DNA of 64,000 nt from Isurus oxyrinchus (taxonomy: Eukaryota): assembly GCA_026770705.1 (NCBI GenBank), contig JANJGN010000783.1:124001-188000 (forward strand). The letters run 5' to 3'. Under the pieces are notes generated by a model. The model ran no database searches and was not told the DNA's origin. It worked only from the letters and a program-made list of their open reading frames with translations. The position numbers and the translations under genes are program-made. Shown piece after piece: positions 6,826 through 36,772 of the stretch. The number at the start of each line of letters is the position of its first letter. Positions within the stretch are counted from its first letter, which is position 1.

Positions 6826-7254
6826 AATTCTTGCCTTAACGACAAACGTCTGGTGGAAATGTTGTCCTTTGCTGGTCCTCACCTTTTGCAAATGCAAATC
6901 CTCTAAAGCACGCCTGGGGCGTGTGCACTTGCTGTGCGGGTGTGATAGCAAAGCAGTGCCCAGAGAGTGAGGCCGTGCGGCCCGTCGTGCCTGTGCCAGC
7001 CCTCTGGCGGCTCCCTCCCATCCGTGGCCCTCCCCCTTCTCTTTGGCTGTGGCCCCTGCACTTATGTTTCCGTTTCCCCTCTTCCAGCATTTATCCCATT
7101 TTGAAAGTTACCCCCCCCCCCTCCCCACCGCCCGCCCGCCCTTCCTCCAACGCCTGCCCGGCTCGCGCCCGGCTCCCTTCTCCCACCCATCCACCCAGAG
7201 CAGCATCCGGCACAAGCACGGCGTTCGTTTTCACGCCTGCGCTGGCGAGTCCCA

Positions 7255-16200: not shown

Positions 16201-19200
16201 TCCTCCGCCCTCACCACTAGGCCCCTCGACACCTCCTCTGCCCTCACCGCTAGGCCCATCGACACCTCCTCCACCCTCACCGCAAGTTCCCTCGACACCT
16301 CCTCCCTCACCGTTAGGCCCATCCACACCTCCACCCTCACTGCTAGGCCACTCGACACCTCCTCCGCCCTCACCGCTAGACCACTCGACACCTCCTCCGC
16401 CCTCACCTCTAGGCCTCTCCACACCTACTCCGCCCTCACCGCTAGGCCTGTCGACACCTCCTCCGCCCTCACCGCTAGGCCTCTCCACAACTCCTCCGCC
16501 CTCACCGCTAGGCCTCTCCACACCTCCTCCGCCCTCACCACTAGGCCCCTCGACACCTCCTCCGCACTCACCGCTAGGCCCCTCGACACCTCCTCCGTAC
16601 TCACCGCTAGGCCTCTCGACACCTCCACCCTCACCGGTAGGCCCCTTGACACCTCTGCCCTCACCGCTAGGCCTCTCGACACCTCCACCCTCACCGCTAG
16701 GCCCCTCGACACCTCCACCCTCAGTGCTAGGCCCCTCGACACCTCCTCCATCACCGCTAGGCCTCTCGACACCTCCACCCTCACCGCTAGGCCCCTTGAC
16801 ACCTCTGCCCTCACCGCTAGGCCTCTCGACACCTCCACCCTCACCGCTAGGCCCCTCGACACCTCCACCTTCACCGCTAGGCCCCTCGACACCTCCTCCA
16901 TCACCGCTAGGCCTCTCGACACCTCCACCCTCACCGCTAGGCCCCTCGACACCTCTGCCCTCACCGCTAGGCCCCTCAACACCTCTGCCCTCACCGCTAG
17001 GCCTCTCGACACCTCCACCCTCACCGCTAGGCCCCTCGACACCTCCACCCTCACCGCTAGGCCCCTCGACACCTCCTCCACCCTCACCGCTAGGCCTCTC
17101 CACATCTCTTCCGCCCTCACCGCTAGGCCTCTCGACACCTCCTCCATCACCGCTAGTCCCCTCGACACCTCCTCCATCACCGCTAGGCCCCTCAACACCT
17201 CCTCCATCACCGCTAGGCCCCTCGACACCTCCTCCGCCCTCACCGCTAGGCCCCTCGACACCTCCACCCTCACCTCTAGGCCCCTCGACACCTCCTCCAC
17301 CCTCACCGCTAGGCCGCTCGACACCTCCACCCTCGCCGCTAGGCCCCTCGACACCTCCTCCACCCTCACCGCTAGGCCTCTCGACACCTCCTCCATCACC
17401 ACTAGGCCTCTCCACACCTCCTCCGCCCTCACCACCAGGCCCCTCGACACCTCCACCCTCACCGCCATGCCCCTCGACACCTCCACCCTCACCGCTAGGC
17501 CCCTCGACACCTCCACCCTCACCACTAGGCCCCTCGACACCTCCGCCCTCACCGCTTGGCCCCTCGACACCTCCACCCTCACCGCCATGCCCCTCGACAC
17601 CTCCACCCTCACCGCTAGGCCCCTCGACACCTCCACCCTCACCACTAGGCCCCTCGACACCTCCGCCCTCACCGCTTGGCCCCTCGACACCACCACCCTC
17701 ACCGCTAGGCCCCTCGACACCTCTCCCCTCACCGCTAGGCCCCTCGACACCTCCACCCTCACCGCTAGGCCCCTCGACACTTCCTCCACCCTCACCGCTA
17801 GGCCTCTCCACACCTCCTCCACCCTCACCACTAGGCCTCTCGACACCTCCTCCACCCTCATCGCTAGGCCCCTCGACACCTCCTCCCCCTCACCGCTAGG
17901 TCTCTCGACACCTCCTCCGCCCTCACCGCTAGGCCCCTCGACAACTCCTCCATCACCGCTAGGCCTCTCCACACCTCCTCCGCCCTCACCGCTAGGCCCC
18001 TCTTCACCTCCGCTCTCACCACTAGGCCCCTTGACACATCCTCCGTCACCACTAGGCCCCTCGACACCTCCTCCGCCCTCACCGCTAGGCCTCTTGACAC
18101 CTCCTCCGTCACCGCTAGGCCTCTCGACACCTCCTCCGCCCTCACCGCTAGGCCCCTCGACACCTCCTCTATCACTGCTAGGCCCCTCGACACCTCCTCC
18201 ATCACTGCTAGGCCCCTCGACACCTCCTCCGCACTCACCGCTAGGCCTCTCCACACCTCCTCCACCCTCACCGCTAGGCCTCTCGACACCTCCTCCACCC
18301 TCACCGCTAGGCCCCTCGACACCTCCTCCGCACTCACCGCTAGGCCCCTCGACACCTCCTCCGTACTCACCGCTAGGCCTCTCGACACCTCCACCCTCAC
18401 CGGTAGGCCCCTTGACACCTCTGCCCTCACCGCTAGGCCTCTCGACACCTCCACCCTCACCGCTAGGCCCCTCGACACCTCCACCCTCAGTGCTAGGCCC
18501 CTCGACACCTCCTCCATCACCGCTAGGCCTCTCGACACCTCCACCCTCACCGCTAGGCCCCTTGACACCTCTGCCCTCACCGCTAGGCCTCTCGACACCT
18601 CCACCCTCACCGCTAGGCCCCTCGACACCTCCACCTTCACCGCTAGGCCCCTCGACACCTCCTCCATCACCGCTAGGCCTCTCGACACCTCCACCCTCAC
18701 CGCTAGGCCCCTCGACACCTCTGCCCTCACCGCTAGGCCCCTCAACACCTCTGCCCTCACCGCTAGGCCTCTCGACACCTCCACCCTCACCGCTAGGCCC
18801 CTCGACACCCTCCACCCTCACCGCTAGGCCCCTCGACACCTCCTCCACCCTCACCGCTAGGCCTCTCCACATCTCTTCCGCCCTCACCGCTAGGCCTCTC
18901 GACACCTCCTCCATCACCGCTAGTCCCCTCGACACCTCCTCCATCACCGCTAGGCCCCTCAACACCTCCTCCATCACCGCTAGGCCCCTCGACACCTCCT
19001 CCGCCCTCACCGCTAGGCCCCTCGACACCTCCACCCTCACCTCTAGGCCCCTCGACACCTCCTCCACCCTCACCGCTAGGCCGCTCGACACCTCCACCCT
19101 CGCCGCTAGGCCCCTCGACACCTCCTCCACCCTCACCGCTAGGCCTCTCGACACCTCCTCCATCACCACTAGGCCTCTCCACACCTCCTCCGCCCTCACC

Positions 19201-21222
19201 ACCAGGCCCCTCGACACCTCCACCCTCACCGCCATGCCCCTCGACACCTCCACCCTCACCGCTAGGCCCCTCGACACCTCCACCCTCACCACTAGGCCCC
19301 TCGACACCTCCGCCCTCACCGCTTGGCCCCTCGACACCTCCACCCTCACCGCCATGCCCCTCGACACCTCCACCCTCACCGCTAGGCCCCTCGACACCTC
19401 CACCCTCACCACTAGGCCCCTCGACACCTCCGCCCTCACCGCTTGGCCCCTCGACACCACCACCCTCACCGCTAGGCCCCTCGACACCTCTCCCCTCACC
19501 GCTAGGCCCCTCGACACCTCCACCCTCACCGCTAGGCCCCTCGACACTTCCTCCACCCTCACCGCTAGGCCTCTCCACACCTCCTCCACCCTCACCACTA
19601 GGCCTCTCGACACCTCCTCCACCCTCATCGCTAGGCCCCTCGACACCTCCTCCCCCTCACCGCTAGGTCTCTCGACACCTCCTCCGCCCTCACCGCTAGG
19701 CCCCTCGACAACTCCTCCATCACCGCTAGGCCTCTCCACACCTCCTCCGCCCTCACCGCTAGGCCCCTCTTCACCTCCGCTCTCACCACTAGGCCCCTTG
19801 ACACATCCTCCGTCACCACTAGGCCCCTCGACACCTCCTCCGCCCTCACCGCTAGGCCTCTTGACACCTCCTCCGTCACCGCTAGGCCTCTCGACACCTC
19901 CTCCGCCCTCACCGCTAGGCCCCTCGACACCTCCTCTATCACTGCTAGGCCCCTCGACACCTCCTCCATCACTGCTAGGCCCCTCGACACCTCCTCCGCA
20001 CTCACCGCTAGGCCTCTCCACACCTCCTCCACCCTCACCGCTAGGCCTCTCGACACCTCCTCCACCCTCACCGCTAGGCCCCTCGACACCTCCTCCGCTC
20101 TCTCCACTAGGCCTCTCGACACCTCCTCTGCCCTCACCGCTAGGCCCCTCGACACCTCCTCCATCACCGCTAGGCCTCTCCACACCTCCTCCGCCCTCAC
20201 CACTAGGCCCCTCTTCACCTCCACTCTCACCGCTAGGCCCCTCAACACATCCTCCGTCACCGCTAGGCCCCTCGACACCTCCTCCGCCCTCACCGCTAGG
20301 CCTCTCAACACCTCCTCCACCCTCACCGCTAGGCCTCTCGACACCTCCTCCGCCCTCACCGCTAGCCCTCTCGACACCTCTTCCACCCTCACCGCTAGGC
20401 CTCTCCACACCTCCTCCACCCTCACCGCTAGGCCCCTCGACACCTCCTCCACCCTCACCGCTAGGCCCCTCGACACCTCCTCCGCCCTCACCGCTAGGCG
20501 CCTCGACACCTCCTCCGCCCTCACCGCTAGGCCCCTCGGCACATCCTCCATCACCGCTAGGCCCCTCGACACCTCCGCCCTCACCGCTAGGCCTCTTGAC
20601 ACCTCCTCCGTCACCGCTAGGCCTCTCAACACCTCCTCCGCCCTCACCGCTAGGCCCCTTGACACCTCCTCCACCCTCACCGCTAGGCCTCTCCACACCT
20701 CCTCCACCCTCACCGCTAGGCCCCTCGACTGCTCCTCCACCCTCACCGCTAGGCCTCTCCACACCTCCTCCACCCTCACCACTAGGCCCCTCGACACCTC
20801 CTCCGCCCTCACCACTAGGCCCCTCGACACATCCTCCGTCACCGCTAGGCCCCTCCACACCTCCTCCGCCCTCACAACTAGGCCTCTTGACACCTCCTCC
20901 GTCACCGCTAAGCCTCTCGACACCTCCTCCGCCCTCACCGCTAGGCCCCTCGACACCCTCCTCCGCCCTCATCGCTAGGCCCCTTGACACCTCCTCCGCC
21001 CTCCCCGCTAGGCCTCTCGACACCTCGTCCGCCCTCACCGCTAGGTCCCTCGACACCTCCACCCTCACCGCTAGGCCCTTCGACACCTCCGCCCTCACCG
21101 CTAGGCCCCTCGACACCTCCTCCATCACCGCTTGGCCTCTCCGCACCTCCTCCATCACCGCTAGGTCTCTCCACACCTCCTCCATCACCGCTAGGCCTCT
21201 CCACACCTCCTCCGTCACCGAA
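7255..21222. repeat. ~14-kb satellite with 33/30-bp units (ctcaccgctaggcccctcgacacctcctccgcc) and kb-scale internal duplications
   Basis: Read directly. Identical ORF blocks are offset by 2466, 1331 and 1767 bp. Confidence 0.97.
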
Positions 21223-22424: not shown

Positions 22425-22430
22425 TTTATT
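22425..22430 (-). terminator. Polyadenylation signal AATAAA of the Ig light-chain-like gene
   Basis: TTTATT on the + strand, 160 bp downstream of the C-exon stop. Confidence 0.75.
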
Positions 22431-22590: not shown

Positions 22591-22928
22591 TCACTGGAGT
22601 TCACAGGCCTCCCGCTCGATGGTGCTGACGATGGGCTCGGGGCTGGACTCGTGCTGAAGCTGGCAGGAGTAGCGGGAGTGGGCATCCCACTGCCCCGCGG
22701 GCAGGGTCAGGTAGCCGCTCCAGCTGTAGCTGCCGTCCTTGGCTTGTGCCACCTCCGCCGCGCTGGCGCACAGCTCGCTCTCCGCCTCCCGGCCGTCCAG
22801 TGTCCAGCGGGCGCGCACGTAGCCGGGGTAGAAGCCGTCTGCCAGGCAGCTGAGGGTAACGTTGTCGTGAGTCAGCTGCTCAGCCGGTGGTGGGAGCAGG
22901 TGGACGATTGGCGCCGACAGCTGGCGAC
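22591..22928 (-). CDS. Ig light-chain constant (C1-set) exon
   Basis: Acceptor ccccacAG|GT, phase 1. Translation (S)RQLSAPIVHLLPP..VTLSCLADGFYPG..W..DGSYSWSGYLTL..W..YSCQLQHES..EREACELQ* has the C1-set Cys/Trp/FYP/YxCxxxH motifs and a near-terminal interchain Cys. Confidence 0.95.
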
Positions 22929-23059
22929 CTGTGGGGGTGAGGGGGGGTGGGGGGAGAGAGGAGACATTAGTCGAGTCCCGATACAAAAATAACAACACTG
23001 CCACTCTGCCCCGGTGCTAATCAGCTACTAGAGCCCTCCCGTTACCTCACATCACCCGC

Positions 23060-24335
23060 CCGGTGCGATACGGAGAGCGGAACTGTACACGGTGCTCCCG
23101 GTGTGATACACAGACCGGAACTGTACACGGTGCTCCCAGTGTGATACACAGACCGGAACTGTACACGGTGCTCCCAGTGTGATACACAGACCGGAACTGT
23201 ACACGGTGCTCCCAGTGTGATACACAGACCGGAACTGTACACGGTGCTCCCAGTGTGATACACAGACCGGAACTGTATGCGGTGCTCCCGGTGTGATACA
23301 CAGGCCGGAACTGTACGCGGTGCTCCCAGTGTGATACACAGACCGGAACTGTACGCGGTGCTCCCAGTGTGATACACAGACCGGAACTGTACGCGGTGCT
23401 CCCAGTGTGATACGGAGACCGGAACTGTACGCGGTGCTCCCAGTGTGATACACAGACCGGAACTGTACGCGGTGCTCCCAGTGTGATACGGAGACCGGAA
23501 CTGTACGCGGTGCTCCCAGTGTGATACACAGACCGGAACTGTACACGGCGCTCTCGGTGCGATACGGAGAGCGGAACTGTGCACGGTGCTCCCAGTGTGA
23601 TACGGAGACCGGAACTGTACACGGTGCTCCCAGTGTGATACGGAGACCAGAACTGTACATGGTTCTCCCAGTGTGATACAGAGACCAGAACTGTACACAG
23701 TGCTTCCAGTGTGATACAGAGACTGGAACTGTACACAGTGCTCCCAGTGTGATACACAGACCGGAACTGGACACGGTGCTCCCAGTGTGATACACAGACC
23801 GGAACTGTACACAGTGCTCCCAGTGTGATACACAGACTGGAACTGTACACAGTGCTCCCAGTATGTTAGGGAGACCAGAACTGTACACAGTGCTCCCAGT
23901 GTGATACGGAGACCGGAACTGTACACAGTGCTTCCAGTGTGATACAGAGACTGGAACTGTACACAGTGCTCCCAGTGTGATACACAGACCGGAACTGGAC
24001 ACGGTGCTCCCAGTGTGATACACAGACCGGAACTGTACACAGTGCTCCCAGTGTGATACACAGACTGGAACTGTACACAGTGCTCCCAGTATGTTAGGGA
24101 GACCAGAACTGTACACAGTGCTCCCAGTGTGATACGGAGACCGGAACTGTACACAGTGCTCCCAGTGTGATACGGAGACCGGTACTGTATACAGTGCTCC
24201 CAGTGTGATACGGAGACCGGTACTGTACACAGTGCTCCCAGTGTGATACACAAACCGGAACTGTACACAGTGCTCCCAGTGTGATACAGAGACCGGAACT
24301 GTACACAGTGCTCCCAGTATGTTAGGGAGACTGGG
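23060..24335. repeat. 38-bp minisatellite (~33 copies) filling the J-C intron, unit gaactgtacacagtgctcccagtgtgatacacagaccg; CR1-derived
   Basis: Read directly. The minus-strand unit 'ctgggagcactgtgtacagttccggtct' matches CR1 'ctggagtgctgtgtacagttttggtcc' (LExCVQFWS) at ~29420. Confidence 0.93.
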
Positions 24336-24418
24336 ACTGAGTGCTCCCCCCGGCCCAGTACAGGTGCCATTGCCGTACATAAACTCATGAATTTGACGGT
24401 GGGCTCGAAGATACTCAC

Positions 24419-24772
24419 TGGGTATTAGCAGTTGAACGCCGGTGCCAAAGTGCACTTGGTTGTTGTAAGTGACGGCACAGTAGTAGGCGCCAGTGTCAGC
24501 CTCCGCGATGCTGTTGATGGTTAGGACGTAGCTGTTGGTCTCTGTGTCCCTGGAGGGGAGGTAACGCTCGGTGATGCCCTTGGCCCGATCGATGCTGCCG
24601 CTCGCCCAGTGCACCAGCACCCACTCGGGTCCCTGCGCCCCGCGCCGCCGGTACCAGACGCCCCCATAGTCGCCGATGTTGAGGTGCTCCACCCGGCAGG
24701 ACAAGGCTGCAGTCCCTCCTTTCGGCACGGAGGTGGACAGAGGCTGCTGGAGGACGGGGGTCGGGGCGACGC
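24419..24772 (-). CDS. Ig V-set exon with J already joined (germline VJ), light-chain-like, resembling the elasmobranch sigma-2/sigma-cart type
   Basis: Acceptor tgtctttcAG and donor A|GTGAGT, phase 1-1, 354 bp. Translation GVAPTPVLQQP..LSC..WYRR..PEWVLVH..RYLPSRDTETNSYVLTI..DTGAYYC-AVTYNNQVH-FGTGVQLLIP. No RSS between V and J. The isotype assignment is by recalled similarity only. Confidence 0.95.
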
Positions 24773-24959
24773 CTGAAAGACAGGAAAGTGTGAGCGAAGG
24801 GCAAGGGGTTAGCCCGGTGGGGGGGGAGGCGTGGGGTCTCCGTTCGGAGCTGGAGTGGACGCCTGGAAAGGAAGAGAAAATGGAGGAGGATCGAGAACGG
24901 TGGAAAAAGAGAGAAGGGGGGTGGGGGGGGGGGGGGGTGGGGCGTAGATTGCCCTCCAA

Positions 24960-25910
24960 TGAGAGGCTGAGCGAATTGGGCCGATATTTGCTGGGAGTTC
25001 AGAGGAACGAGAGGCGATCTCACTGAAAGCCGCAGGATTGTGAAGGGGTTTGACGGGGGCGGAGGCTGAGAGATTGTTTCCCCGCTGCTCGCGGGGGGGG
25101 GGTTGGGATCTATAAACATGGGGAGGGGGAGGGGGGTGGGCACAGGCTCAGGATGAGGGGTTGGCCATTTTGGCTAAGGGTTCGGCCATTTTGACTAAGG
25201 GGTCGGCCATTTTGGCTAAGGGGGTCGGCCATTTTGGCTAAGGGGTCGGCCATTTCGGCTAAGGGGTCGGCCATTTTGGCTAAGGAGTCGGCCATTTTTG
25301 ATACGGGGTCGGCCATTTTGGCTAAGGGGTCAGACATTTTGGATACGGGGTCGGCCATTTTGGCTACGGGGTCGGACATTTTGGATACGGGGTTGGCCAT
25401 TTTGGCTACGGGGTCGGACATTTTGGCTACAGGGTCGGCCATTTTGGCTACGGGGTCGGCCATTTTGGCTAAGGGGTCGGCCATTTTGGCTATGGGGTCG
25501 GCCATTTTGGCTATGGGGTCGGCCATTGTGGATACGGGTGGGCCATTTTGGATATGGGGTCGGCCATTTTGGCTATGGGTTCGGCCATTTTGGCTACGGT
25601 GCCGGCCACTTTGGCTATGGGGGTCGGCCATTTTGGACGGAGGTGAGGGGGAATGACTTCACTCGGAGGGCCGCGAATCTCTGGAACTCTCCACCCCAGA
25701 GGGTCGTGGATGCCCCATCGCTGAATATGCCTTAAGGCCGGGACAGGCAGGTTTTCGGTCTCTCGGTTGGGAGGGGTGGAGGGGGGGGGGGCTGCGGTTA
25801 AGGGATACGGGGAGGCGGGCGGAGAACTGGAGTTGACGCCCAAGGTCGGCCACGATCGCATTGGAAGGCGGAGCCGGCTCGAGTGGCCGAATGGCCGTCT
25901 CCTGTGTTCT
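24960..25910 (+). mobile_element. Degenerate CR1 3' fragment, interrupted by the 21-bp array
   Basis: 'gagaggctgagc...gggcacaggctcaggatgagggg' resumes after the array as 'cggaggtgagggggaatgacttcactcggaggg...ctggaactctc' and ends 'ggccgaatggcc...cctgtgttct'. Confidence 0.75.
25156..25637. repeat. 21-bp minisatellite (~23 copies), unit ggggtcggccattttggctaa, most units carrying a YY1-like GCCATTTT
   Basis: Read directly; 7-aa period (AKMADPL) in the ORF track. Confidence 0.93.
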
Positions 25911-27739
25911 ATAGCAACAACACCCCACATTTATATAGCGCCTTAACCCGTCCCCAACGCGCTTCCCGGGGGCTTCGTAAAACCGAGGCCCTGGAGGGGT
26001 TCTTAGGGCTGATTCGTTGGTCGAGGAGGTAGATTTTAAGGAACGTCTGAAAGGAGGGAGAGAGAGAGCAGTGGAGGGGGGGGGGAGGGGGACGGTGAGG
26101 TTGAGGGAGGGAATCCCAGAGACTAGGCCCCCCACCCTCCGCCCCCCACCAGGCAGCTGAAGGCCCGGCCGCCAATGAAACGGGGCTGCTGACAAGAGCA
26201 GAATTCAGGGGAGGCAGGGTCTCAGGGGGTGGTGGGGCTGGAGGAGGGAACAGAGAACGAGATGGGCAAGGGGGCCGAAGGCAAGGGTGAGAAGGTGAAA
26301 ATCGAGGCGTTGCCGGACTGGGAGCCGGGGAGGAGGGGTTCGGTCAGCGAGCACCGTGGGCGACGGGGGGAGTGGGGGGATTTGGAGGGGGGTGGGGGGA
26401 GAGAGGGGGGGAGCCGGTTGCGGGTTAGGACACGTCTGAGTTCGGGTTTGAGGAAGGCCGAACGTGGGAAGCCAGGCCGGAGGGCGTCGGGAGCCGTCGA
26501 GGTCAGGGGTCACGGAGTGGAGGCGTGGGTGAGGGTTTCAGCGGCCGACGAGCTGAGAGAGAGCGCCGGAGCTCAAACGTGGCGCTCAGGTCGGGAACAG
26601 GCTGGCTTCAAGGTTAGAATGGACGAAATGGAGGGAGAGAAAGAAAGAACACAGAGAGAGAGAGAGAGAGAGAGAGAAAACAACCATAACTTGCATTTAT
26701 ATAGCGTCTTTAACACGGTAAAGCGTCCTGAGGTGGTTCACAGGAGCATTTCTAAAGCAAAATAGAACACCAAGCCACATTCAGGGACGTTAGTCCAGAA
26801 TTCCCTGTTATAATGACCGTGAGGCTAATGGCTCTCTCTCTCTCTCTCGCTGTTACTTCTGGAGATTCGTGAAAACAGCACCTCTTCCTTAGCCTCCCTG
26901 TTTTCTTTTTAAATAATTGCTGATTGTCCGTGAACGCCCCCTCAGAAGGTAGTCGCCGGTGTAAGAACCCTGCTAACGGTGGTGATAAGTGTAAAAGCCT
27001 GCCAAAGAGCCTCCCTCACCACCGTTTAACGTTTGCAAGTGTGGAATCTCATTCCTTCGGCTGGTGACATTTTGTGGGGAGATGGCGAAGCTACCCAATT
27101 GTACGTTTTCAAGTTTCATTTCCCTTTACCCTCTCTTCACTTTTGTCTCTCTCTCTCTCTCTGTCTCTGTCTGACTTGACGTTTACATTATCGAGTCGAC
27201 AACACAGAAATGGGCCATTCAGCCCACTCTTCCATGCTGGCCGACATAAGCCTCCCCTCACCCCTCTTCATCTCACCCCAGCGGCGCCTTCTTCCAGTCT
27301 ATTAACCCGGCTTCCCCTTCTGAGTCCCTCTTGTGCTCTGGTTCGGGCACAGCTGGAACATCGAGTCCTGTTGCGATTGCTGCGCTGTAGGAAGGGCGCC
27401 AGTGTTCTCGGCGGGTGGGCGCGGAGAGGGATTTCCCAGATCGGTTCCGGTGGGGGGGGTGTGGGGGGGGGGGGGGTGTTGGGTGGGGTGGATCGGATCG
27501 AGGCGGACACGACTGGGACAGCTTTGGATAAGGTAAACAAGGAAAAGATGTTCCCATTCACTGACAGGGTGAGGATCGGGGAGGGGCACGGATTTAAGAT
27601 TTCGGGCAAGGGGATTTTCAATGGGGTGAGTGGCCTCCTTTATCCGCTATCATGCCTCTATGACTCTCAATTTATGAATACTCGTTTTCAGCGGGTGGTA
27701 CAGGACTTGGGTATTGCTGAAAGTATTCGGTATTCGGGG

Positions 27740-29042
27740 TATTCGGAATGGGCGTGTTAGCGAGAGGCAGCATGGTTTCGGGAAGGGGAGGTCGTGTCTC
27801 ACTAACGTGATGGAGCTTTTGGAGGAAGTGACGAAGATGATCGACGATGGAAGGGCAGTGGATGTTATCTACATGGATTTCTGTAAGGCCTTTGACAAGG
27901 TCCCTCATGGCAGACTGGTACAGAAGGTAAAGTCGCACGGGATCAGAGGTGAGCTGGCAGGATGGATACAGAACTGGCTTAGTCATAGAAGACAGAGGGT
28001 AGCAGTGGAAGGGTGCTTTTCTGAATGGAGAGCTGTGACTAGTGGTGCTCCGCAGGGATCAGCGCTGGGACCTTTGCTGTTTGTGATATACATAAACGAT
28101 TTGGAGGAAAATGTAACTGGGCTAATGAGTAAGTTTGCAGACGACACTAAGGTTGGAGGAGCTGCAGACAGTGAAGAGGATTGTCAAAGGATACAACGGG
28201 ATATAGATCGATTGGAGACTTGGGCGGAGAAGTGGCGGATGGAGTTTAATCCGGACAAGTGCGAGGTAATGCATTTTGGAAGGTCGAATACAGGCAGGAA
28301 TTATACAGTAAATGGCAGAACCCTTAAGTGCATCGACGGGCAGAGGGATCTGGGTGTACAGCTCCACAGGTCACTGAAAGTGGCAATGCAGGTGGATAAG
28401 GCAGCCAGGAAGGCATGTGGCATGCTGGCCTTCATTGGCATTGAGTGTAGGGGCTGGGAAGTCATGCTGCGGCTGTATAGAGCCTTGGTTAGGCCACACT
28501 TGGAATATCGCGTGCAATTCTGGTCGCCACATTACCAGAAGGATATGGAGGGGTTGGAGAGGGTGCGGAGGAGGTTTACCAGGATACTGCCTGGGTCTGG
28601 AGGTTATTAGCTAGGAGGAGAGGTTGGAGAAACTGGGATTGTTCTCACTAGAGCGACGGAGATTGAGGGGCGACTTGATAGAAGTTTACAAAATGACGAG
28701 TGGCCTGGACAGAGTAGATAGTCAGAAGCTTTTCTCCAGGGTGGAAGAGACAATTTACTAGGGGACATGGATTTAAGGTGAGAGGAGAAAACTATAGAGG
28801 AGATGTGCGGGGCAAGTTTTTTACGCAGAGGGTAGTGAGTGTCTGGAATTGGCTGCCAGAGGAGGTGGTGGAAGCAGGTCCGATAGTGGGGTTGAAGAGG
28901 CAGCTTGACAAGTACATGACTAGGATGGGAATAGAGGGGATAGGGACCCCGGAAGTGGGTTTTAGTTTGACAGGCAATATGATCGGCGCAGGCTTGGAGG
29001 GCCGAAGGGCCTCTTCCCATGCTGTACTTTTCTGTGTTCTTT
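27740..29042 (+). mobile_element. 5'-truncated CR1 LINE with reverse transcriptase domain, frameshifted near 28600
   Basis: ORF 27714-28610 has QHGF..GRSCLTN, YMDFCKAFDKVPH, GAPQGSALGPLLF, FADDTK and FNPDKC. ORF2 C-terminus and 3' UTR follow. Confidence 0.95.
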
Positions 29043-29089
29043 ATTTAACACCAAACGTCAAAGGGAAAAATGACTTATACTGCATCAAT

Positions 29090-30610
29090 CGTTCATGCTG
29101 CTACAGCGCAGTAGCGACACGCGTGGTATTCTCCAGCGCCCATCACACAAACGAGGAGTTTAACGTAGAAAATTGTGAGGCCATTCACTTTGGTAAGAAG
29201 AATCAAAAGGCAGACTGTAATGTAAATGGAGAGAGGCTCCAAAAAAGTGCGGCACAGAGGGTTCTGGGTGTTCTTGTGCGTGAAACACAAAAAAGTTAGT
29301 ACGCAGGGGCAGCAAATAATTAAAAAGGCAAATGGAATTTTGGCCCGTACTGCGAGGGGGTTGGAGTTTAAAAATAGAGAAGTCTTGTTACAACTGTACA
29401 GGGTGTTAGTGAGGATGCACCTGGAGTGCTGTGTACAGTTTTGGTCCTCGTATTCAAGAAAGGACATACTGGCATTGGAGGCAGTTCAGAAGAGATTCAC
29501 TAGGCTGATCCCTGGGATGAAGGGGTTGACTTATCGAGAACGGCTGAACAGGTTAGGCCTTTTATTCATTCCAGTTTAGAAGAAGGAGGGGTGATCTTAT
29601 TGAAACGTACAGGATTCAGAGGGGGCTGGACAGGGTAGATGTTGAGAAGGTGTTTCCACTAGTGGGGGAATCTCGAGCTAGGGGACAAAGTTACAGAATA
29701 AGGGGACACTCCTTTGCAACTGAGATGCGAAGGAGTTCCTTCTCTCAGAGGACAGTGGAATGTCTGGAATAATCCACCCCAGAGAGTTGTGGGGGCTGGA
29801 TCACTGAAGGTATTTAAAGAGGAGGTCGAGAGATTTTTGAAGTATCGGGGAGTTGAGGGCTATGAGGAGCTGGAACGAAAGAGGGGTCGAGGCCTAGGGC
29901 AGATCAGCCATGATCTTATTGAATGGTGGGACAGGCTGGAGGGGCCGAGTGGTCTGCTCCTGTTCCTATTTCTTCTGTTCTTAATGTGGGAGATGACTTA
30001 CAGTGCCGGTATGATGTCAGGCATACATCCCATTGACTGGCCAATCATGTCAAACAGCATGTCCCTTCTGCTGTTACAGTGGGCAAGGTACACACTGTAC
30101 CCAACCAGCCCGTTCCTGCAAAACTAAAAAATACAGTGCCCAACTCGATGTTATTCTGTGATTGGACAACACTTGCTAAACAATCCTGAATGCGCTAAGA
30201 ATTACACTCAAATCCAAATTAAGATTATCAGTTATACTCAGCGTGGCTCACTTATGCATGCTAGAGGCTACATATATTCACACACAAGGGAGATAGAAGG
30301 AGCATGTCCATGCGTTGCGCCCTTTCGCAGCTAGGCAAAAACTTGGCGGACAGACATTCCCTGGTTCATTCCCCACAGCAGTGCCTTGACCAATAAAGAG
30401 TCGACCTGGCTGGTTTGAATTTGAACAAAAGCTTGGCAGTGAAATGCTCCCTGGTGCATTCCCCATGGCAATGCCTCCCCCAATCAGAGTCCATTTGTCA
30501 ACCATTCAGCACTCTCTTCTCATGCAGTATAAATTGTTGTTCCCTCTACCATTGGTATTCCTGTGAACTAGCCTGATGAGTGCAAGATGAAAAACTTCGA
30601 CAACATGCAT
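29090..30610 (+). mobile_element. Degenerate Penelope-like element 3' part (GIY-YIG endonuclease remnant plus terminal repeat region), split by a CR1 insertion
   Basis: Translations CYSAVATRVVF (~29100), LANHVKQHVPSAV (~30040), SVIGQHLLNNPECAKNY (~30155) and HLCMLEATYIHTQG (~30250). A duplicated CCAAT block, TATAAA and a hammerhead-like core at 30573-30598 follow. Confidence 0.65.
29155..29982 (+). mobile_element. CR1 LINE 3' fragment nested in the Penelope remnant
   Basis: EFNVENCEAIHFG, KKANGILA, HLECCVQFWS, LEAVQKRFTRLIPG; 3' tail 'ctcctgttcctatttcttctgttctt'. Confidence 0.88.
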
Positions 30611-30811
30611 CAACAATATCCACCTCAAACCATGCTCTGTGGGAGCGAGTTCCACTTTCTCCCCACTCTCTAGGTGAAGAAATTTCTCCTGAATTTCCGG
30701 CTGGGTTTATTAGTGACTATCTAATATTCATAAACCCTTTTTCTAATCTCATTCAATTGTGGAAACGTCTGCCTTATCAAAGGGCCCTTTTATAATTTCA
30801 TCAGGTTCAAT

Positions 30812-33057
30812 TACATTACCATCACTGAATCCCCCACTATCAACATCCTGGTGGTTACCATTGACCAGAAACTGAACTGGGGACAAGCCATATAAATACT
30901 TTGGCTACAAGAGCAGGTCAAAGGCTGGGAATCCTGCGGAGAGTAACTCACCTCCTGTCTCCCCTCCAAAGCCTGTCCACCATCTACAAGGCACCAGTCA
31001 GGAGTGTAATGGGATACTCCCCACTTGCCTGGATGAGTTGCAGCTCCCACAACACTCGAGAAGCTCGACACCATCCAGGACAAAGCAGCCCCACCCACCC
31101 CCCACCCGCTCGATCGGCACCCCATCCACAAACATTCACTCCCTCCAGCCACCGACGCACAGTAGCAGCAGTGTGTGTACCATCTACAAGATGCACTGCA
31201 GCAACTCGCCAAGGCTCCTTCGACAGCGCCGCCCAAACGCATGGCCGCTACCATCTAGAAGGACAAGGGCAGCAAACACATGGGGAACACCCACCACCTG
31301 GAAGTTCCCCCTCCGAGCCCCTCACCATCCCGACTTGGAAATATATCGGCCGTCCCTTCACTGTTGCTGGGTCCAAATCCTGGAACTCCCTCCCTAACAG
31401 CGCTGTGGGTGTACCTACATGACAGGGACAAAATCCTGGAACTCCCTCCCTAACAGCGCTGTGGGTGTATCTACCCCACAGGGACAAAATCCTGGAACTC
31501 CCTCCCTAACAGCGCCGTGGGTGTACCTACACCACACAGGGGACAAAATCCTGGAACTCCCTCCCTAACAGCACTGTGGGTGTACCTACACCACAGGGAC
31601 AAAATCCTGGAACTCCCTCCCTAACAGCGCCATGGGTGTACCTACACCACAGGGGACAAAATCCTGGAACTCTCTCTCTAACAGCACTGTGGGTGTACCT
31701 ACACCACAGGGGACAAAATCCTGGAGCTCCCTCCCTAACAGCACTGTGGGTGTACCTACACCACAGGGACAAAATCCTGGAACTCCCTCCCTAACAGCGC
31801 TCTGGGTGTACCTACACCACACAGGGGACAAAATCCTGGAACTCCCTCCCTAACAGCACCGTGGGTGTACCTACACCACAGGGGACAAAATCCTGGAACT
31901 CCCACCCTAACAGCGCAGTGGGTGTACCTACACCACACAGGGGACAAAATCCTGGAACTCCCTCCCTAACAGTGCCGTGGGTGTACCTACACCACACAGG
32001 GGACAAAATCCTGGAACTCCCTCCCTAACAGTGCTGTGGCTGTACCTACACCACACAAGGGACAAAATCCTGGAACTCCCTCCCTAACAGCACTGTGGGT
32101 GTACCTACACCACAGGGACAAAATCCTGGAACTCCCTCCCTAACAGCGCTGTGGGTGTACCTACAACACAGGGGACAAAATCCTGGAACTCCCTCCCTAA
32201 CAGCACCGTGGGTGTACCTACACCACAGGGGACAAAATCCTGGAACTCCCTCCCTAACAGCACCCCTAACAGCGCTGTGGGTGTACCTACACCACACAGG
32301 GACAAAATCCTGGAACTCCCTCCCTAACAGCGCTGTGGGTGTACCTACACCACAGGGACAAACATCCAGGAACTCCCTCCCTAACAGCGCCGTGGGTGTA
32401 CCTACTCCACACGGACAAAATCCTGGAACTCCCTCCCTAACAGCGCTGTGGGTGTACCTACACCACACGGGACAAAATCCTGGAACTCCCTCCCTAACAG
32501 CGCTGTGGGTGTACCTACTCCACACGGACAAAATCCTGGAACTCCCTCCCTAACAGCACTGTGGGTGTACCTACACCACAGGGACAAAATCCTGGAACTC
32601 CCTCCCTAACAGCGCTGTGGGTGTACCTACACCACAGGGACAAAATCCTGGAACTCCCTCCCTAACAGCGCCTGTGGGTGTACCTACACCACAGGGACAA
32701 AATCTGGAACTCCCTCCCTAACAGCACTGTGGGTCGTACCCTACCACCACAGGGGACAAAATCCTGGAACTCCCTCCCTAACAGCGCTGTGGGTGTACCT
32801 ACACCACAGGGGACAAATCCTGGAACTCCCTCCCTAACAGTGCTGTGGGTGTACCTACACCACACCGGGGACAAAATCCTGGAACTCCCTCCCTAACAGC
32901 GCAGTGGGTGTACTACACCACAGGGGGACTGCAGCGGTTCAAGAAGGCGGCTCATCCACCACCTTCTCAAGGGGGCAATTAGGGACGGGCAATAAACGCT
33001 GGGCCCGGCCCAGCGACCCCCACCCCCCCACCCCAACATCCCCGTGAATGAATAAAA
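30812..33057 (+). mobile_element. LINE (CR1/L2 clade) 3' fragment with an internal tandem amplification
   Basis: ESPTINILVVTIDQKLNW, LSTIYKA.VRSVM.YSPLAW, GSKSWNSLPNS. After the array it resumes 'ggactgcagcggttcaagaaggcggctca' and ends 'gtgaatgaataaaaa'. Confidence 0.85.
31370..32925. repeat. ~56-59-bp tandem array (aaaatcctggaactccctccctaacagcgctgtgggtgtacctacaccacaggggac), ~27 copies
   Basis: Read directly; the unit is a segment of the host LINE. Confidence 0.93.
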
Positions 33058-33599
33058 AGGAACCGGTCAGCCCTCAGCCTTCCCCTTGTGTGGAGGAAGT
33101 GAGCCGCAGCGGGTTTCAAAACCTTCGCCGAATTCTACTGTACGTCCTCGAACAGTCTCTGTGCCGCATTGACAATCACCGGTGGCAGAACAGCACCCTT
33201 CCTCGATCGCCATACAGTTTGTTTTGTCCTTGCAGCCTCGTAACTGCTAACACTTGCCTGCCTTTCGTTGCACTGTAAGTGGGTACGATCTTCATGGTAC
33301 GAGGCCTTGTAAAAGGTTGGGGGGTGGGGGTGGGGGTGCTCATTTCCAAACCTACCCTCGTTCAAAATTAATTTCACCCGAGCTCACCTCCAGGGCAAAT
33401 AATTAGCAACCTCACGGAGGATGCTTTATCCTCTCTTTTCAGAGGACAATGTCAGTTTGGCTTGCACACGCAGCCGAACGGACATGCAGCCCCATGTGGA
33501 ATCAGCAACCCCCCCTCGCGTACCAGGAGCTCCAACCACGTCGGCGGCCAGTGAATGGCTCGAGCATTGCGAAGTGCCTCGGGAAGCTCCCGGGGGAGC

Positions 33600-33815
33600 C
33601 TGGCGCGGCGGCGTTGGGCGCTGGACTGGTGACCTAGAGGGCCCCTGGGGACCCCGGTTCGAACCCCAGCCCAGCAGCTGGGCGGAATTTGGACTCAGCG
33701 ACGCCAGGCCAGGATCTGGAAATCAGAAAGCCCGACGCTGAACGGGAAGCCTCTGCCCGGTCGTCGTGAGAACCCGCCCGGTTCACGAAATCTGCCCTCC
33801 TTGCCCGGCTCTGCA
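33600..33815 (+). mobile_element. tRNA-derived SINE, degenerate and GC-shifted
   Basis: B-box GGTTCGAACCC at ~33656-33666, followed by SINE body-like 'ggaattt...atctggaaatc...ggttcac...aaatctgccctccttgcc'. Confidence 0.55.
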
Positions 33816-35384
33816 CCACCACCACCCCCCCCCCCCCTCCCTCCCTCCCCCCCACCCGAAGGAGGGCATCTCGGGGGCTGGGTAAAAATAAAAATCAGGT
33901 AAAACCGGACGGTGAGGGAAGATGTGAGGGGCGAGCGATCAGGAGCTCACTCAAAAGAGGTCAGAGTCCCGGAGGGAGAGCGGGGTGGAGAGATTCGGGG
34001 ACGGGAATTGCAGACCTGAGGCGCGGCCAACTCTCCCGAGAAACGCCGACTGGGGTGGGGGGGGGGGTGAAGAGAGCGAGGATGGGGGGGGGGGGGCCAG
34101 GGGGGAGGGGGGACAGTTGCCTTCAGCGATTATGGGGGGTGCCAAGCGTCACTCCGACAAGGAGCTGTTTCGACACGATGGCTGGGGTGAAGGCCTGATG
34201 GGTGAAAAGTTGAGGGCAAGGTTGAAACCTAGCTTATTTTTAACGTCAGAGGGCGTCGAGAAGAAAAAGGCAAGACTGACTGACACACAGAGAGAGAGAG
34301 AGAGAAAGCAAAGACACCTTTCATTTCTATAGCACCTTTAACAAAGCTAAACGTCCCAAGGTGCTTCACGGGGACTATTATAAAACAAGACCTGACCCCA
34401 AGCTGCCTTTGGAGATATTGGTCCAGAGCAGCCTCTGTAATAATAATGGTGAGATTGACAGCGCTCGAGAACCACATCTCACCCTTAGCATCCCTTTCAT
34501 TCTCTGCTACGCCACTCCTGCATCGTCCCGTTAATTTTCCATTAAACCGGCCTCAGAAAATTGTTTCAGAGTGTATAACCTATCCACGATGCGATAATGG
34601 TTAATGTCTGCCAGGCAACCCCCTCCGACACCGGGACACATCGTTTTTCTTTTTGTTTAACAAGTGTGGAGTCTCATTCCTTCAGATGGCAAGATTTTAA
34701 GAGGAGTTTTTTTTTAAAAAAAAATGCCAGATTGTCATTTTTCCATGACTGTTTTCTCCCCCTTGCGCTGCACAATCCTTTAATTTCATTGGTTAAGGAA
34801 TTTGAATTGCCCGATTCTGCCAGGTCTTTGCCACCCCGTTGGCCCTCACTGCGCGGTTATGAGCTGAAGTGGGTGGGGAGACGGCAGGGGGCAAATTAAA
34901 CGAGTGGCAGGCAGACACCGTGAGGTGCTCGGCACAGATGATACTGGCCCTTTAAAGAGCATCCCAGGACAGGCGCAATTCTGGGGGCTTGGGGTCCGGG
35001 CTGCTGAAGGCACGGCTGCCAATGGTGAGGCGATTAAAATCGGGGCACGCTCGAGAGGCAGGAATTAGAGGAGACCAAAATATCTCGGAGAGCGGTAGTG
35101 CTGGAGGAGGGCCAGGAGAGAGAGGGATGGGCTAGGGCCATGGAAGGATTTGAAAACAAGGACGAGGCTTTTCAAACTAAGACCCTTGCTTAACCAGGGG
35201 ACAGTGTAGCTAGCGAGCACAGGGGGTGACGGCCGAATAAGACCTGGTTCGGACACGGGGACAGCAGAGTTTTGGATGGGCTGAAGTTTAAGGAGGGTAA
35301 AATGCGGGAGTGTAGCCTAGAGTGCATTGGAATACTCGAGTCTGAAGGTGACAAAGAGACTGGATGAGGGTATCAGCAGTGGAG

Positions 35385-36187
35385 AGAATCTAACCATCTC
35401 CCCCAAGACATTCAATGGCATTACCATCGCTGAATCCCCCACTATCAACATCCTGGGGGTTACCATTGACCAGAAACTGAACTGGGGACCCAGCCATATA
35501 AATACTGGGGGCTACGAGAGCTGGGCAGAGGCTGGGAATCCTGCGGAGAGTAACTCACCTCCTGTCCTCCCCCCCCAAAGCCTGTCCACCATCTACAAGG
35601 CACAAGTCAGGAGTGGGATGGGACACTCCCCACTTGCCTGGATGAGTTGCAGCTCCCACAACACTCGAGAAGCTCGACACCGTCCAGGACAAAGCAGCCC
35701 CCCCCACCACCCCCCGCTCGATCGGCCCCCCCATCCACAAACATTCACTCCCCTCCCACCCACCGACGCACAGTAGCAGCAGCGTGTGTACCATCTACAA
35801 GATGCACTGCAGCAACTCACCAAGGCTCCTTCGACAGCGCTGCCCAAACCCACGGCCGCTTACCGTCTAGAAGGACAAGGGCAGCAGACACATGGGGAAC
35901 ACCCACCACCTGGAAGTTCCTCTCCGAGCCCCTCACTATCCCGGCTTGGAAATATATCGGCCGTTCCTTCACTGTCGCTGGGTCAAAATCCTGGAACTCC
36001 CTCCCTAACAGCGCCTTGGGTGTACCTACACCACAGGGACAAAATCCTGGAACTCCCTCCCTAACAGCGCTGTGGGTGTACCTACACCACACAGGGGACA
36101 AAATCCTGGAACTCCCTCCCTAACAGCACCATGGGTGTACCTACACCACACAGGGGACAAAATCCTGGAACTCCCTCCCTAACAGCA
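35385..36187 (+). mobile_element. Second copy of the same LINE 3' fragment, with ~3 copies of the same ~57-bp unit
   Basis: TFNGITIAESPTINILGVTIDQKLNW..LSTIYKAQVRS; near-colinear with 30812-31500. Confidence 0.85.
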
Positions 36188-36412
36188 GCTCCCTCAGTAC
36201 TGACCCTCCGACAGTGCGGCTCTCCCTCAGCACTGACCCTCCGACAGTGCGGCTCTCCCTCAGCACTGACCCTCCGACAGTGCGGCTCTCCCTCAGCACT
36301 GACCCTCCGACAGTGCGGCTCTCCTTCAGCACTGACCCTCCGACAGGGTGGCTCTCCCTCAGCACTGACCCTCCGACAGTGCGGCTCTCCCTCAGTACTG
36401 ACCCTCCGACAG
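36188..36412. repeat. 33-bp minisatellite (ctccctcagcactgaccctccgacagtgcggct), ~7 copies, probably derived from a Deu-domain SINE
   Basis: Repeat read directly; SINE origin from recalled similarity to 'gacagtgcagcactccctcagtactg'. Confidence 0.8.
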
Positions 36413-36590
36413 CTCGACGCTGCCTCAGCTCCTGGTGCGAGCGGCTCTTTGAAGAGGAGGGGTGCGGGGGGGTGCTCAAAGCCCTGACCTCAGTTAGCAA
36501 CTGAGCCCTGGGTTGACACAAGATCCCATCCCCCAGACCGTCGGCCGCTCACCTAAGCGTACCCCGAGCCGATGCCAAGCATCCACTGAC

Positions 36591-36636
36591 CTGTGAGACA
36601 CAACAGGAAAATGGCGATCCCACACAAGTTCTCCAT
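36591..36636 (-). CDS. Leader (signal peptide) exon of the Ig light-chain-like gene: MENLCGIAIFLLCLT(G)
   Basis: Kozak ACCATGG, a 46-nt exon (typical Ig leader size), hydrophobic core and phase-1 donor G|GTCAGT that joins in frame to the V exon (G+GC = Gly). An octamer lies 129 bp upstream. Not present in the ORF track. Confidence 0.85.
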
Positions 36637-36679
36637 GGTTGGGTTCTGCTGCACGATTGTTGCCTGTGCCTCTGCGCCC

Positions 36680-36772
36680 TCTACTTATTGAGCCCGACTT
36701 TGGGTGGGCCGGACACGGCTCCTTTGCATAATATTCAAACGCAGCCAACCAACAGGGCGCCGGGATGCAAAT
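36680..36772 (-). promoter_or_regulatory. Ig-type promoter: perfect octamer ATTTGCAT (36765-36772, light-chain orientation), inverted variant ATGCAAAG (36722-36729) and AT-rich TATA-like CAATAAG (~36684-36690)
   Basis: Motifs read directly; spacing to the leader ATG is typical of Ig V promoters. Confidence 0.8.

What the first reader, a model, noticed from the sequence alone, without database searches (positions are those of the whole stretch)
24773..36636. Leader exon and octamer promoter sit 11.8 kb from the V exon
Seen: the only convincing signal-peptide exon I found (MENLCGIAIFLLCLTG, Kozak ACCATGG, octamer at -129) is separated from V by an 11,818-bp intron packed with CR1, Penelope, SINE and minisatellites. 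Known: leader-V introns of rearranging Ig genes are normally short, and AID hypermutation acts within roughly 1-2 kb of the transcription start. Inference: the VJ exon lies far outside the hypermutation window, so the gene would be shielded from somatic mutation as well as from rearrangement, giving a fully invariant chain. The many decayed insertions also suggest the gene has been a fixed single-copy gene for a long time.
Basis: partly seen in the sequence, partly recalled or inferred. Interest (0 to 1): 0.8.

Follow-up and report, generated by a model that had tools for sequence, protein, structure and literature searches.

The report
Shark light-chain gene, 11.8-kb leader intron
A shark antibody light-chain gene that is already assembled in inherited DNA really does splice its signal-peptide exon across an 11.8-kb intron onto the variable exon. 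This puts the variable region far beyond the distance over which antibody hypermutation works in mice, but nobody has yet measured whether it escapes mutation.

Summary

**What is in the window (minus strand):**
- a perfect octamer, ATTTGCAT, at 36772-36765
- a leader exon, ATG at 36636, donor after 36591
- an 11,818-bp intron, 36590-24773
- a germline-joined VJ exon, 24772-24419
- a C exon, 22928-22591, followed by AATAAA

**Transcript evidence.** Assembled contigs from two small runs of the window's own species run from the C exon through VJ. They stop matching at the acceptor and continue with letters that map uniquely, with no mismatch, to the leader exon. No closer leader is used, and neither is the in-frame acceptor 90 bp upstream.

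**What the gene is.** It is a single-copy orthologue found in seven shark species of five orders. Where the model is complete it has the same kind of leader, and CDR1 and CDR2 are more conserved than the frameworks. Its nearest family is the type I / sigma-2 light chain, from which it is separated by a long branch.

**What is not shown.** The claim that the distance shields V from hypermutation rests on the mouse rule of about 100 nt to 1-2 kb from the promoter (PMC2212980). It could not be tested here, because contigs hide rare variants.

The same gene was noted elsewhere in this scan. Interest is moderate.

The parts
36765..36772 (-). Perfect Ig-type octamer ATTTGCAT, ending 129 nt upstream of the ATG
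   Evidence: 2 matches in 64 kb against 0.15 expected. This one has the orientation and position of a light-chain promoter. Function not tested.
36722..36729 (-). Second, inverted near-octamer ATGCAAAG (7 of 8)
   Evidence: Read directly. It lies about 35 nt upstream of the TATA-like AATAAG. Inference only.
36684..36689 (-). TATA-like AATAAG, about 50 nt before the ATG
   Evidence: The longest transcript contig reaches 36649, so the start site lies at or upstream of that base.
36591..36649 (-). Leader exon as seen in RNA contigs. Coding part 36636-36591 (MENLCGIAIFLLCLT plus 1 base), donor GTCAGT at 36590-36585
   Evidence: In one search the 49-letter loose end of the X1 contig maps uniquely, with 0 mismatches over its first 30 letters, to 36601-36630. 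The 10 letters before that are the end of the leader, 36591-36600.
24773..36590 (-). Leader-V intron, 11,818 bp, GT...AG, with a strong polypyrimidine tract at the acceptor
   Evidence: In X1 and X2 no contig joins V to anything inside 24773-30319.
27678..28607 (+). LINE reverse-transcriptase fragment, antisense to the gene, 310 aa without a stop
   Evidence: ORF; RVT_1, 5.4e-27. Depth reaches 1e5 in genomic runs (table 2).
31375..32926 (.). 56-bp minisatellite, 27 copies. A short second array of the same unit lies at 35980-36186
36189..36412 (.). 33-bp minisatellite just downstream of the leader donor
25156..25636 (.). 21-bp minisatellite, 23 copies, 0.4 kb upstream of V
24773..24864 (-). In-frame alternative acceptor (AG at 24864-24863), 90 nt upstream of the used one. 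Not used in the contigs
   Evidence: The X1 and X2 contigs join the leader at 24772.
24419..24772 (-). Germline-joined VJ exon. V-set domain, YYC...FGTG J motif in the same exon, no RSS, donor GTGAGT
   Evidence: Pfam V-set 5e-16. Covered with 0 true mismatches by the X1 and X2 contigs.
22929..24418 (-). J-C intron, mostly a 38-bp minisatellite (23059-24318)
   Evidence: The RNA contigs leave the stretch at the J donor.
22591..22928 (-). C exon. C1-set domain with a C-terminal Cys in ...REACELQ, stop TGA at 22593-22591
   Evidence: Pfam C1-set 6e-19.
22425..22430 (-). Poly(A) signal AATAAA
   Evidence: The 925-nt X1 contig has 510 nt beyond V, which places its end about 10 nt past this signal.

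Best explanation
This is an expressed three-exon, non-rearranging immunoglobulin light-chain gene of a lamniform shark close to the great white.

Shown:
- An octamer-bearing promoter and a phase-1 leader exon at 36.6 kb are spliced across an 11,818-bp intron onto a VJ exon that is already joined in the germline. That exon is then spliced to a single C exon.
- The intron is filled with minisatellites and retroelement pieces.
- The gene is a single-copy orthologue present across shark orders. CDR1 and CDR2 are better conserved than the frameworks, so it encodes a fixed binding surface.

Inferred:
- The transcription start is about 11.9 kb from V, and in mouse AID-driven hypermutation fades 1-2 kb from the start. 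V is therefore probably not hypermutated, and the chain would be invariant.
- I read the long intron as a consequence of lost constraint more than as a purpose-built shield. A gene that does not rearrange and need not mutate can let its leader intron grow to the size usual in a large shark genome.
For: - Sequence anatomy.
- Domains.
- Best leader candidate by scan.
- Octamer enrichment.

Spliced transcript contigs:
- The X1 contig (925 nt) lies on 24417-24782. Its only 2 mismatches fall in the last 10 nt, where the leader end TGTCTCACAG was forced onto the intron end TGTCTTTCAG.
- Its 49-letter overhang equals 36601 onward exactly and uniquely.
- The X2 contig (891 nt) lies on 24417-24773 with 0 mismatches, has 28 more letters 5' and 506 letters 3'.
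- Both leave the DNA exactly at the J donor.
- The runs hold only 84-98 million letters, too little to assemble a shark genome, so the contigs are cDNA.

Orthologues:
- Models with a homologous leader: Carcharodon METLCGIAVFLLCLTG, Mustelus, Heterodontus, Heptranchias, Rhincodon.
- Clade support 100/99, on a branch of 0.91 away from conventional type I chains.
- CDR1 69% and CDR2 65% mean pairwise identity against 61-62% in the frameworks. Conventional type I shows the reverse pattern.

Literature:
- Conventional shark leader intron of 186 bp (PMC2193156).
- Distance rule for hypermutation (PMC2212980).
Against: - No mutation data exist. Contigs show consensus only, and the tissue and cell type of the runs are coded and unknown, so B-cell expression is inferred from the octamer alone.
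- The distance rule comes from mouse. AID can act many kb from a promoter at switch regions.
- The sense strand is mildly G-skewed over the 56-bp minisatellite at 31-33 kb.
- The intron length is as assembled. Minisatellite arrays may be mis-sized.
- CDR2 serines use AGC codons, the hotspot type (read). This fits descent from mutating genes and does not exclude residual targeting.
- Inference: deep error-corrected sequencing of this VJ exon from spleen or epigonal B cells, against germline DNA of the same animal, showing substitutions at the rate seen in conventional kappa or sigma-2 genes of the same cells.
Confidence: 0.8

Rival explanations
1. The long intron does not protect V. Shark AID still reaches the VJ exon, through an intronic promoter or enhancer, R-loop-prone repeats, or a looser distance rule, and the chain is diversified by hypermutation as other germline-joined shark light chains are reported to be.
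For: - Reviews state that germline-joined shark and skate light chains are expressed, and that hypermutation diversifies shark VL (PMC5192425).
- The CDR2 serines are AGC hotspot codons.
- The sense strand is G-skewed at 30-33 kb over a 1.5-kb repeat array.
Against: - In mouse, mutation frequency depends on distance from the promoter and is lost after 1-2 kb (PMC2212980).
- The window holds no second octamer near V.
- The RNA contigs show no intron-initiated form.
- CDR1 and CDR2 are conserved across shark orders, which argues for a fixed specificity rather than a mutating one.
Confidence: 0.17
2. The 11.8-kb distance is specific to this lineage or to this assembly. The ancestral and usual state of the gene is a short leader intron, and the length here is recent repeat bloat or mis-assembly with no functional meaning.
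For: - Much of the intron is minisatellite or very high-copy repeat, including a still-open RT fragment.
- Array lengths are hard to assemble.
- Orthologue intron lengths could not be measured.
Against: - Genomic contigs of a second species (organism B) match the V-proximal intron at 24773-25059, 25620-26084 and 26689-26779 at about 97% identity. The V differences of organism B reproduce those of the Carcharodon protein.
- So at least the first 2 kb upstream of V are shared and hold no leader.
- Three of nine orthologue models lack or mis-model the leader: Cetorhinus is fused to a macro-domain gene, Stegostoma has an aberrant N-terminus, and Chiloscyllium is partial. This is what a distant leader exon would cause.
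- The window contains no N.
Confidence: 0.2
3. Some transcripts use another 5' end: the in-frame acceptor at 24862, or an unrecognised closer leader or promoter in other tissues or stages. V would then sit near a start site in those cells.
For: - A second good acceptor with an open frame lies 90 nt upstream of V (scan note s1-863097).
- Only one sample (X1 and X2 share it) gave RNA contigs.
Against: - Both contigs use 24772 and the 36.6-kb leader.
- No other phase-1 hydrophobic mini-exon with a decent donor exists between V and 40 kb.
- Orthologue proteins start with the same leader and carry no 30-aa insert.
Confidence: 0.08

Closest known systems
Germline-joined light-chain genes of cartilaginous fish (type I / sigma-2 in skates, type II / lambda (NS3), some NS4 kappa genes, one NS5 gene in nurse shark)
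   Same: V and J are fused in the inherited DNA. [quoted passage not shown]
   Different: - Those genes sit in compact clusters. The one leader intron reported is 186 bp, in split NS4 genes (PMC2193156); here it is 11,818 bp.
- This gene is a separate, single-copy orthologue. It shares only 42-45% identity with the conventional type I chain of the same species group and lies on a long branch.
Nurse shark germline-joined NS5 (sigma-2) light chain, the reported preferred partner of the neonatal germline-joined heavy chain IgM1gj
   Same: It is a non-rearranging chain related to sigma-2 and is thought to give a fixed, innate-like antibody (PMC5192425).
   Different: Identity with that gene is not established. 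No nurse shark sequence was retrieved. NS5 genes were defined as one small family, whereas this C domain is far from conventional type I C domains (35-42% identity).
Germline-joined sigma-2 genes of gar, coelacanth and turtles
   Same: They are low-copy with V and J joined in the genome, and they are sigma-2-like (PMC5985310).
   Different: The one bony-vertebrate relative retrieved (a caecilian) is closer to conventional shark type I (45% in V, 52% in C) than to this gene (33% in V, 38% in C). This gene is therefore not simply their orthologue.
Mammalian surrogate light chain (VpreB plus lambda5)
   Same: It is an invariant, non-rearranging light-chain-like partner encoded by ordinary genes.
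   Different: The surrogate chain is split into two proteins with unique tails. Here there is one complete VJ-C chain. Reviews state that no surrogate chain is known in fish (PMC5192425). Function here is untested.
UrIg / UrIg2, non-rearranging VJ genes of elasmobranchs
   Same: They have a single-exon VJ with the canonical split leader (PMC12227049). UrIg2 appears among the PDB matches of the C domain.
   Different: UrIg genes carry several C domains and form homodimers. This gene has one C1 domain and the light-chain C-terminal Cys.

Membership tests
Immunoglobulin light chain | N-terminal V-set domain followed by one C1-set domain | tested here: met
   Pfam V-set 5.3e-16 and C1-set 6.1e-19
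Immunoglobulin light chain | J-type FGXG motif at the end of V, and a C-terminal cysteine for the bond to the heavy chain | tested here: met
   ...YYCAVTYNNQVHFGTGVQLLIP and ...REACELQ stop. Both are conserved in the orthologues.
Immunoglobulin light chain | Split leader: signal peptide on its own exon, spliced in phase 1 to V | tested here: met
   Spliced contigs join 36591 to 24772
Immunoglobulin light chain | Pairs with an Ig heavy chain and is made by B cells | not testable with these tools
   Only the octamer hints at B-cell expression. The run tissues are coded.
Germline-joined (non-rearranging) Ig gene | V and J contiguous in one exon in germline DNA, with no RSS between them | tested here: met
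   The open frame runs uninterrupted from FR1 through FGTG to the donor GTGAGT. Unspliced genomic contigs of a second species cover the same exon.
Sigma-2 (type I, NS5, sigma-cart) isotype | Groups with named type I / sigma-2 chains in V and C phylogeny | tested here: inconclusive
   - Named type I chains (Leucoraja, Heterodontus) are the nearest family outside the orthologues.
- The gene forms its own clade (100/99) on a branch of 0.91, with 42-45% identity.
- Sigma, kappa and lambda reference chains were not in the tree.
Conventional target of somatic hypermutation | V exon lies within about 0.1-2 kb downstream of the transcription start | tested here: not met
   V starts about 11.9 kb from the leader exon's 5' end. 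Rule taken from PMC2212980.
Conventional target of somatic hypermutation | Somatic substitutions in V in activated B cells | not testable with these tools
   Only consensus contigs were available. They match the germline V, which says nothing about rare variants.
Surrogate light chain (VpreB / lambda5) | V-like and J-C-like parts on separate proteins with unique non-Ig tails | tested here: not met
   One transcript carries leader, VJ and C, with no extra tail.

The most novel reading that the evidence does not exclude
Sharks carry a fifth, invariant light chain: a single-copy, pre-joined VJ-C gene kept in at least five shark orders, with a conserved CDR1/CDR2 surface. Its promoter has been moved about 12 kb from V, so AID cannot touch it. 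It would serve as a fixed partner, for germline-joined or nascent heavy chains, as a functional analogue of a surrogate or innate light chain.
Probability: 0.2. Interest if true: 0.8.

Novelty: new variant of a known kind. Interest (0 to 1): 0.5.

Why it matters
Ig V genes almost always keep the leader exon within a few hundred bases of V. Because the promoter sets the hypermutation window, that compactness may be under selection.

This gene is a natural counter-example. It is a transcribed, conserved light-chain gene whose V lies about 12 kb from its promoter. That allows a direct test of whether the mouse distance rule for AID holds in the oldest living lineage that has antibodies. It would also show whether sharks keep a truly invariant light chain, bearing on the long-open question of what stands in for a surrogate light chain in fish.

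There is a practical side too. A distant leader explains why some automatic gene models of the orthologues are truncated or fused to a neighbouring gene.

Tried and rejected
I did not try it again.
- **Two papers were not held**: PMC7094790, the four-isotype paper, and PMC12010099.
- **No joined protein was searched.** V and C were searched apart. Each was given as an unbroken window reference running on into open intron frame, only to set the length window, and scored on the exon part alone. The third search used an alignment of database proteins.
- **The search of protein representatives was not used.** The word search had already named the nearest family.
- **Amblyraja P0004** first looked like a skate orthologue, with 52% identity in V. 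Domain-wise identities show it is a conventional type I chain: 87% in C to Leucoraja type I against 33% to this gene.
- **The caecilian hit** is not closer to this gene than to conventional type I. The idea that this gene is the orthologue of bony-fish joined sigma-2 was dropped.
- **The second octamer** at 6892-6899 has no leader-like exon after it.
- **The bacterial-type promoter scan** is irrelevant here.
- **Mutation frequency** could not be assessed. All four runs are Logan contigs, and read laying has only one call.
Full report
**Observation**

All features lie on the minus strand. The window shows a perfect octamer ATTTGCAT at 36772-36765, an inverted near-octamer at 36729-22, and a TATA-like AATAAG at 36689-84. 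The ATG at 36636 sits in the context ACCATGG. The 46-nt leader coding stretch reads MENLCGIAIFLLCLT plus one base and ends in CAG|GTCAGT at 36591.

The V exon begins at 24772 behind tgtctttcag. It runs in one frame through YYC and FGTG to a GTGAGT donor at 24419. A C exon follows at 22928-22591, ending ...REACELQ, with AATAAA at 22430-25. The leader-V intron is 36590-24773, which is 11,818 bp. Pfam calls V-set (5e-16) and C1-set (6e-19).

The octamer occurs twice in 64 kb, against 0.15 expected. A scan of all phase-1 ATG...GT mini-exons between V and 40 kb ranks this leader first and gives no credible closer one.

**Is the junction used?**

The run search returned four small runs of one sample (X1-X4, organism A). 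They hold 29-40% of the sampled words of a 2.4-kb stretch, about the share that its exons make up. I laid X1 and X2 on 24320-30319.

- **X1.** A 925-nt contig lies on 24417-24782 with only two mismatches. It carries a 49-letter overhang beyond 24782. The first 30 letters of the overhang match the window once, exactly, at 36601-36630 inside the leader exon.
- **The ten bases in between.** They are the end of the leader, TGTCTCACAG. The aligner laid them on the similar end of the intron, TGTCTTTCAG, and this accounts for the two mismatches.
- **X2.** An 891-nt contig lies on 24417-24773 with no mismatch, 28 more letters 5' and 506 letters 3'.
- **Both contigs** leave the DNA at the J donor. The X1 3' length places its end about 10 nt past the AATAAA.

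Runs of 84-98 million letters cannot assemble a shark genome at depth 13-21, so these contigs are cDNA. Neither the in-frame acceptor at 24862 nor any element within 5.5 kb upstream of V is used.

**Second species**

X8 and X11 (organism B) give unspliced genomic contigs at about 97% identity. Their V differences at 24455, 24646 and 24658 reproduce the V>L, R>Q and V>A differences of the Carcharodon carcharias protein P0001. Organism B is therefore most likely the great white shark or a near relative, and the window comes from a close relative of it.

Their contigs also match intron sequence at 24773-25059, 25620-26084 and 26689-26779. The first 2 kb upstream of V are thus shared and hold no leader in that species either.

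**What the gene is**

Searches with V alone and C alone found one close relative per species.

| Species | V identity | C identity |
|---|---|---|
| Carcharodon | 97% | 95% |
| Cetorhinus | 86% | not returned |
| Mustelus | 70% | 72% |
| Heterodontus | not returned | 64% |
| Chiloscyllium | not returned | 63% |
| Heptranchias | not returned | 62% |

Rhincodon was added by the profile search.

Where the model is complete, the leader is homologous: METLCGIAVFLLCLTG, MEVVWQTIIFLLCLTA, MEAMSRMLVFFLCLTG and MEAVQRSLILLLCLTG.

Beyond these, the profile score drops from at least 386 bits to at most 304. The next hits are type I / sigma-2 chains, including the named Leucoraja type I chain. In a maximum-likelihood tree the seven shark proteins form a clade (100/99) on a branch of 0.91 away from conventional type I chains of sharks and rays. 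Identity to the conventional chain of Carcharodon is 45% in V and 42% in C.

Within the clade, CDR1 (69%) and CDR2 (65%) are better conserved than the frameworks (61-62%). Conventional type I chains show the reverse, with CDR1 at 48% and frameworks at 71-75%. This is the signature of a fixed binding surface.

**Intron content**

- Four minisatellites.
- A 310-aa open RT fragment antisense to the gene.
- About 2.6 kb (27.7-30.3 kb) with read depth of 1e5 in genomic runs.
- Two copies of one element, each followed by the 56-bp array.

I did not verify the family names CR1, Penelope or SINE. Some inserts look young, so the repeats themselves do not date the gene. The orthologues do.

**Interpretation**

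The background statements hold. The leader intron of conventional nurse shark NS4 genes is 186 bp (PMC2193156). In mouse, mutations begin about 100 nt from the promoter and extend 1-2 kb, with frequency depending on distance from the promoter (PMC2212980). By that rule, a V exon 11.9 kb from the start lies outside the window.

Three things are not shown.
- Whether the rule holds in sharks at this locus.
- Whether any intronic element restores targeting. The sense strand is mildly G-skewed over the 56-bp array.
- What the mutation frequency actually is.

I therefore accept the structure as proven and rate 'not hypermutated' as likely but untested. I read the long intron chiefly as relaxed constraint in a gene that needs neither rearrangement nor mutation.

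One indirect hint suggests the arrangement is not confined to this species. Three of nine orthologue models lack or mis-model the leader: Cetorhinus is fused to a macro-domain gene, Stegostoma has an aberrant N-terminus, and Chiloscyllium is partial.

**Comparison with what is known**

Germline-joined light chains are well known in cartilaginous fish. One germline-joined sigma-2 chain is reported as the partner of the neonatal IgM1gj (PMC5192425). Joined sigma-2 genes also exist in gar, coelacanth and turtles (PMC5985310). Automatic annotation of related sharks already predicts this exon structure.

Three things are new here.
- Transcript proof of an 11.8-kb leader intron in such a gene.
- Its status as a separate, shark-wide orthologue with conserved CDRs.
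- The testable consequence for AID reach.

**Limits**

- The large representative search was not used.
- The tissue of the RNA sample is unknown.
- The same gene was flagged elsewhere in this scan.

Noticed in passing
window 24862-24864: A second acceptor (ttcctttccag|GCGTCCACTCC, reading G-VHS) lies 90 nt upstream of the used one, in frame and without stops. It looks like a local duplicate of the real acceptor. The RNA contigs do not use it.
   Followed up: partly
window 6880-6900, minus strand: The only other perfect octamer in the window sits in GATTTGCATTTGCAAAAGG, at the edge of a GC-rich minisatellite. No leader-like exon follows it.
   Followed up: partly
window 23055-24998, minus strand: The 38-bp minisatellite of the J-C intron keeps the V reading frame open for 648 codons. 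If the J donor were skipped, translation would read on through the repeat.
   Followed up: no
window 30865-31419 with 31375-32926, and 35321-35773 with 35980-36186: Two copies of the same element (shared peptide SPLAWMSCSSHNTREARH...) are each followed by an array of the same 56-59-bp unit, one of 27 copies and one of 3.6. This is either a repeat family with an expandable tail or a duplication inside the intron.
   Followed up: no
window 7000-21200 and 38690-64000: The gene is boxed in by two very large satellite blocks: about 30-bp GC-rich units on one side and a 39-bp unit on the other. Together they fill most of the window.
   Followed up: no
proteins P0002 (Cetorhinus), P0068 (Stegostoma), P0006 (Chiloscyllium): These orthologue gene models lack the leader. 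One is fused to an upstream macro-domain gene, one has an 85-aa non-signal N-terminus, and one is partial. They are likely annotation errors caused by a distant leader exon.
   Followed up: partly
protein P0004 (Amblyraja radiata): This skate chain has a conventional type I C domain (87% to Leucoraja type I). Its V shares the shark gene's YGG.WYR and HWASGSI motifs in CDR1 and CDR2. The cause is either convergence or an old exchange of V exons.
   Followed up: partly
window 24320-25059 against organism B contigs: Between the two shark species the VJ exon differs at 4 of 354 bases (3 change the protein). The flanking intron differs at about 3-6%, so the exon is under constraint.
   Followed up: partly
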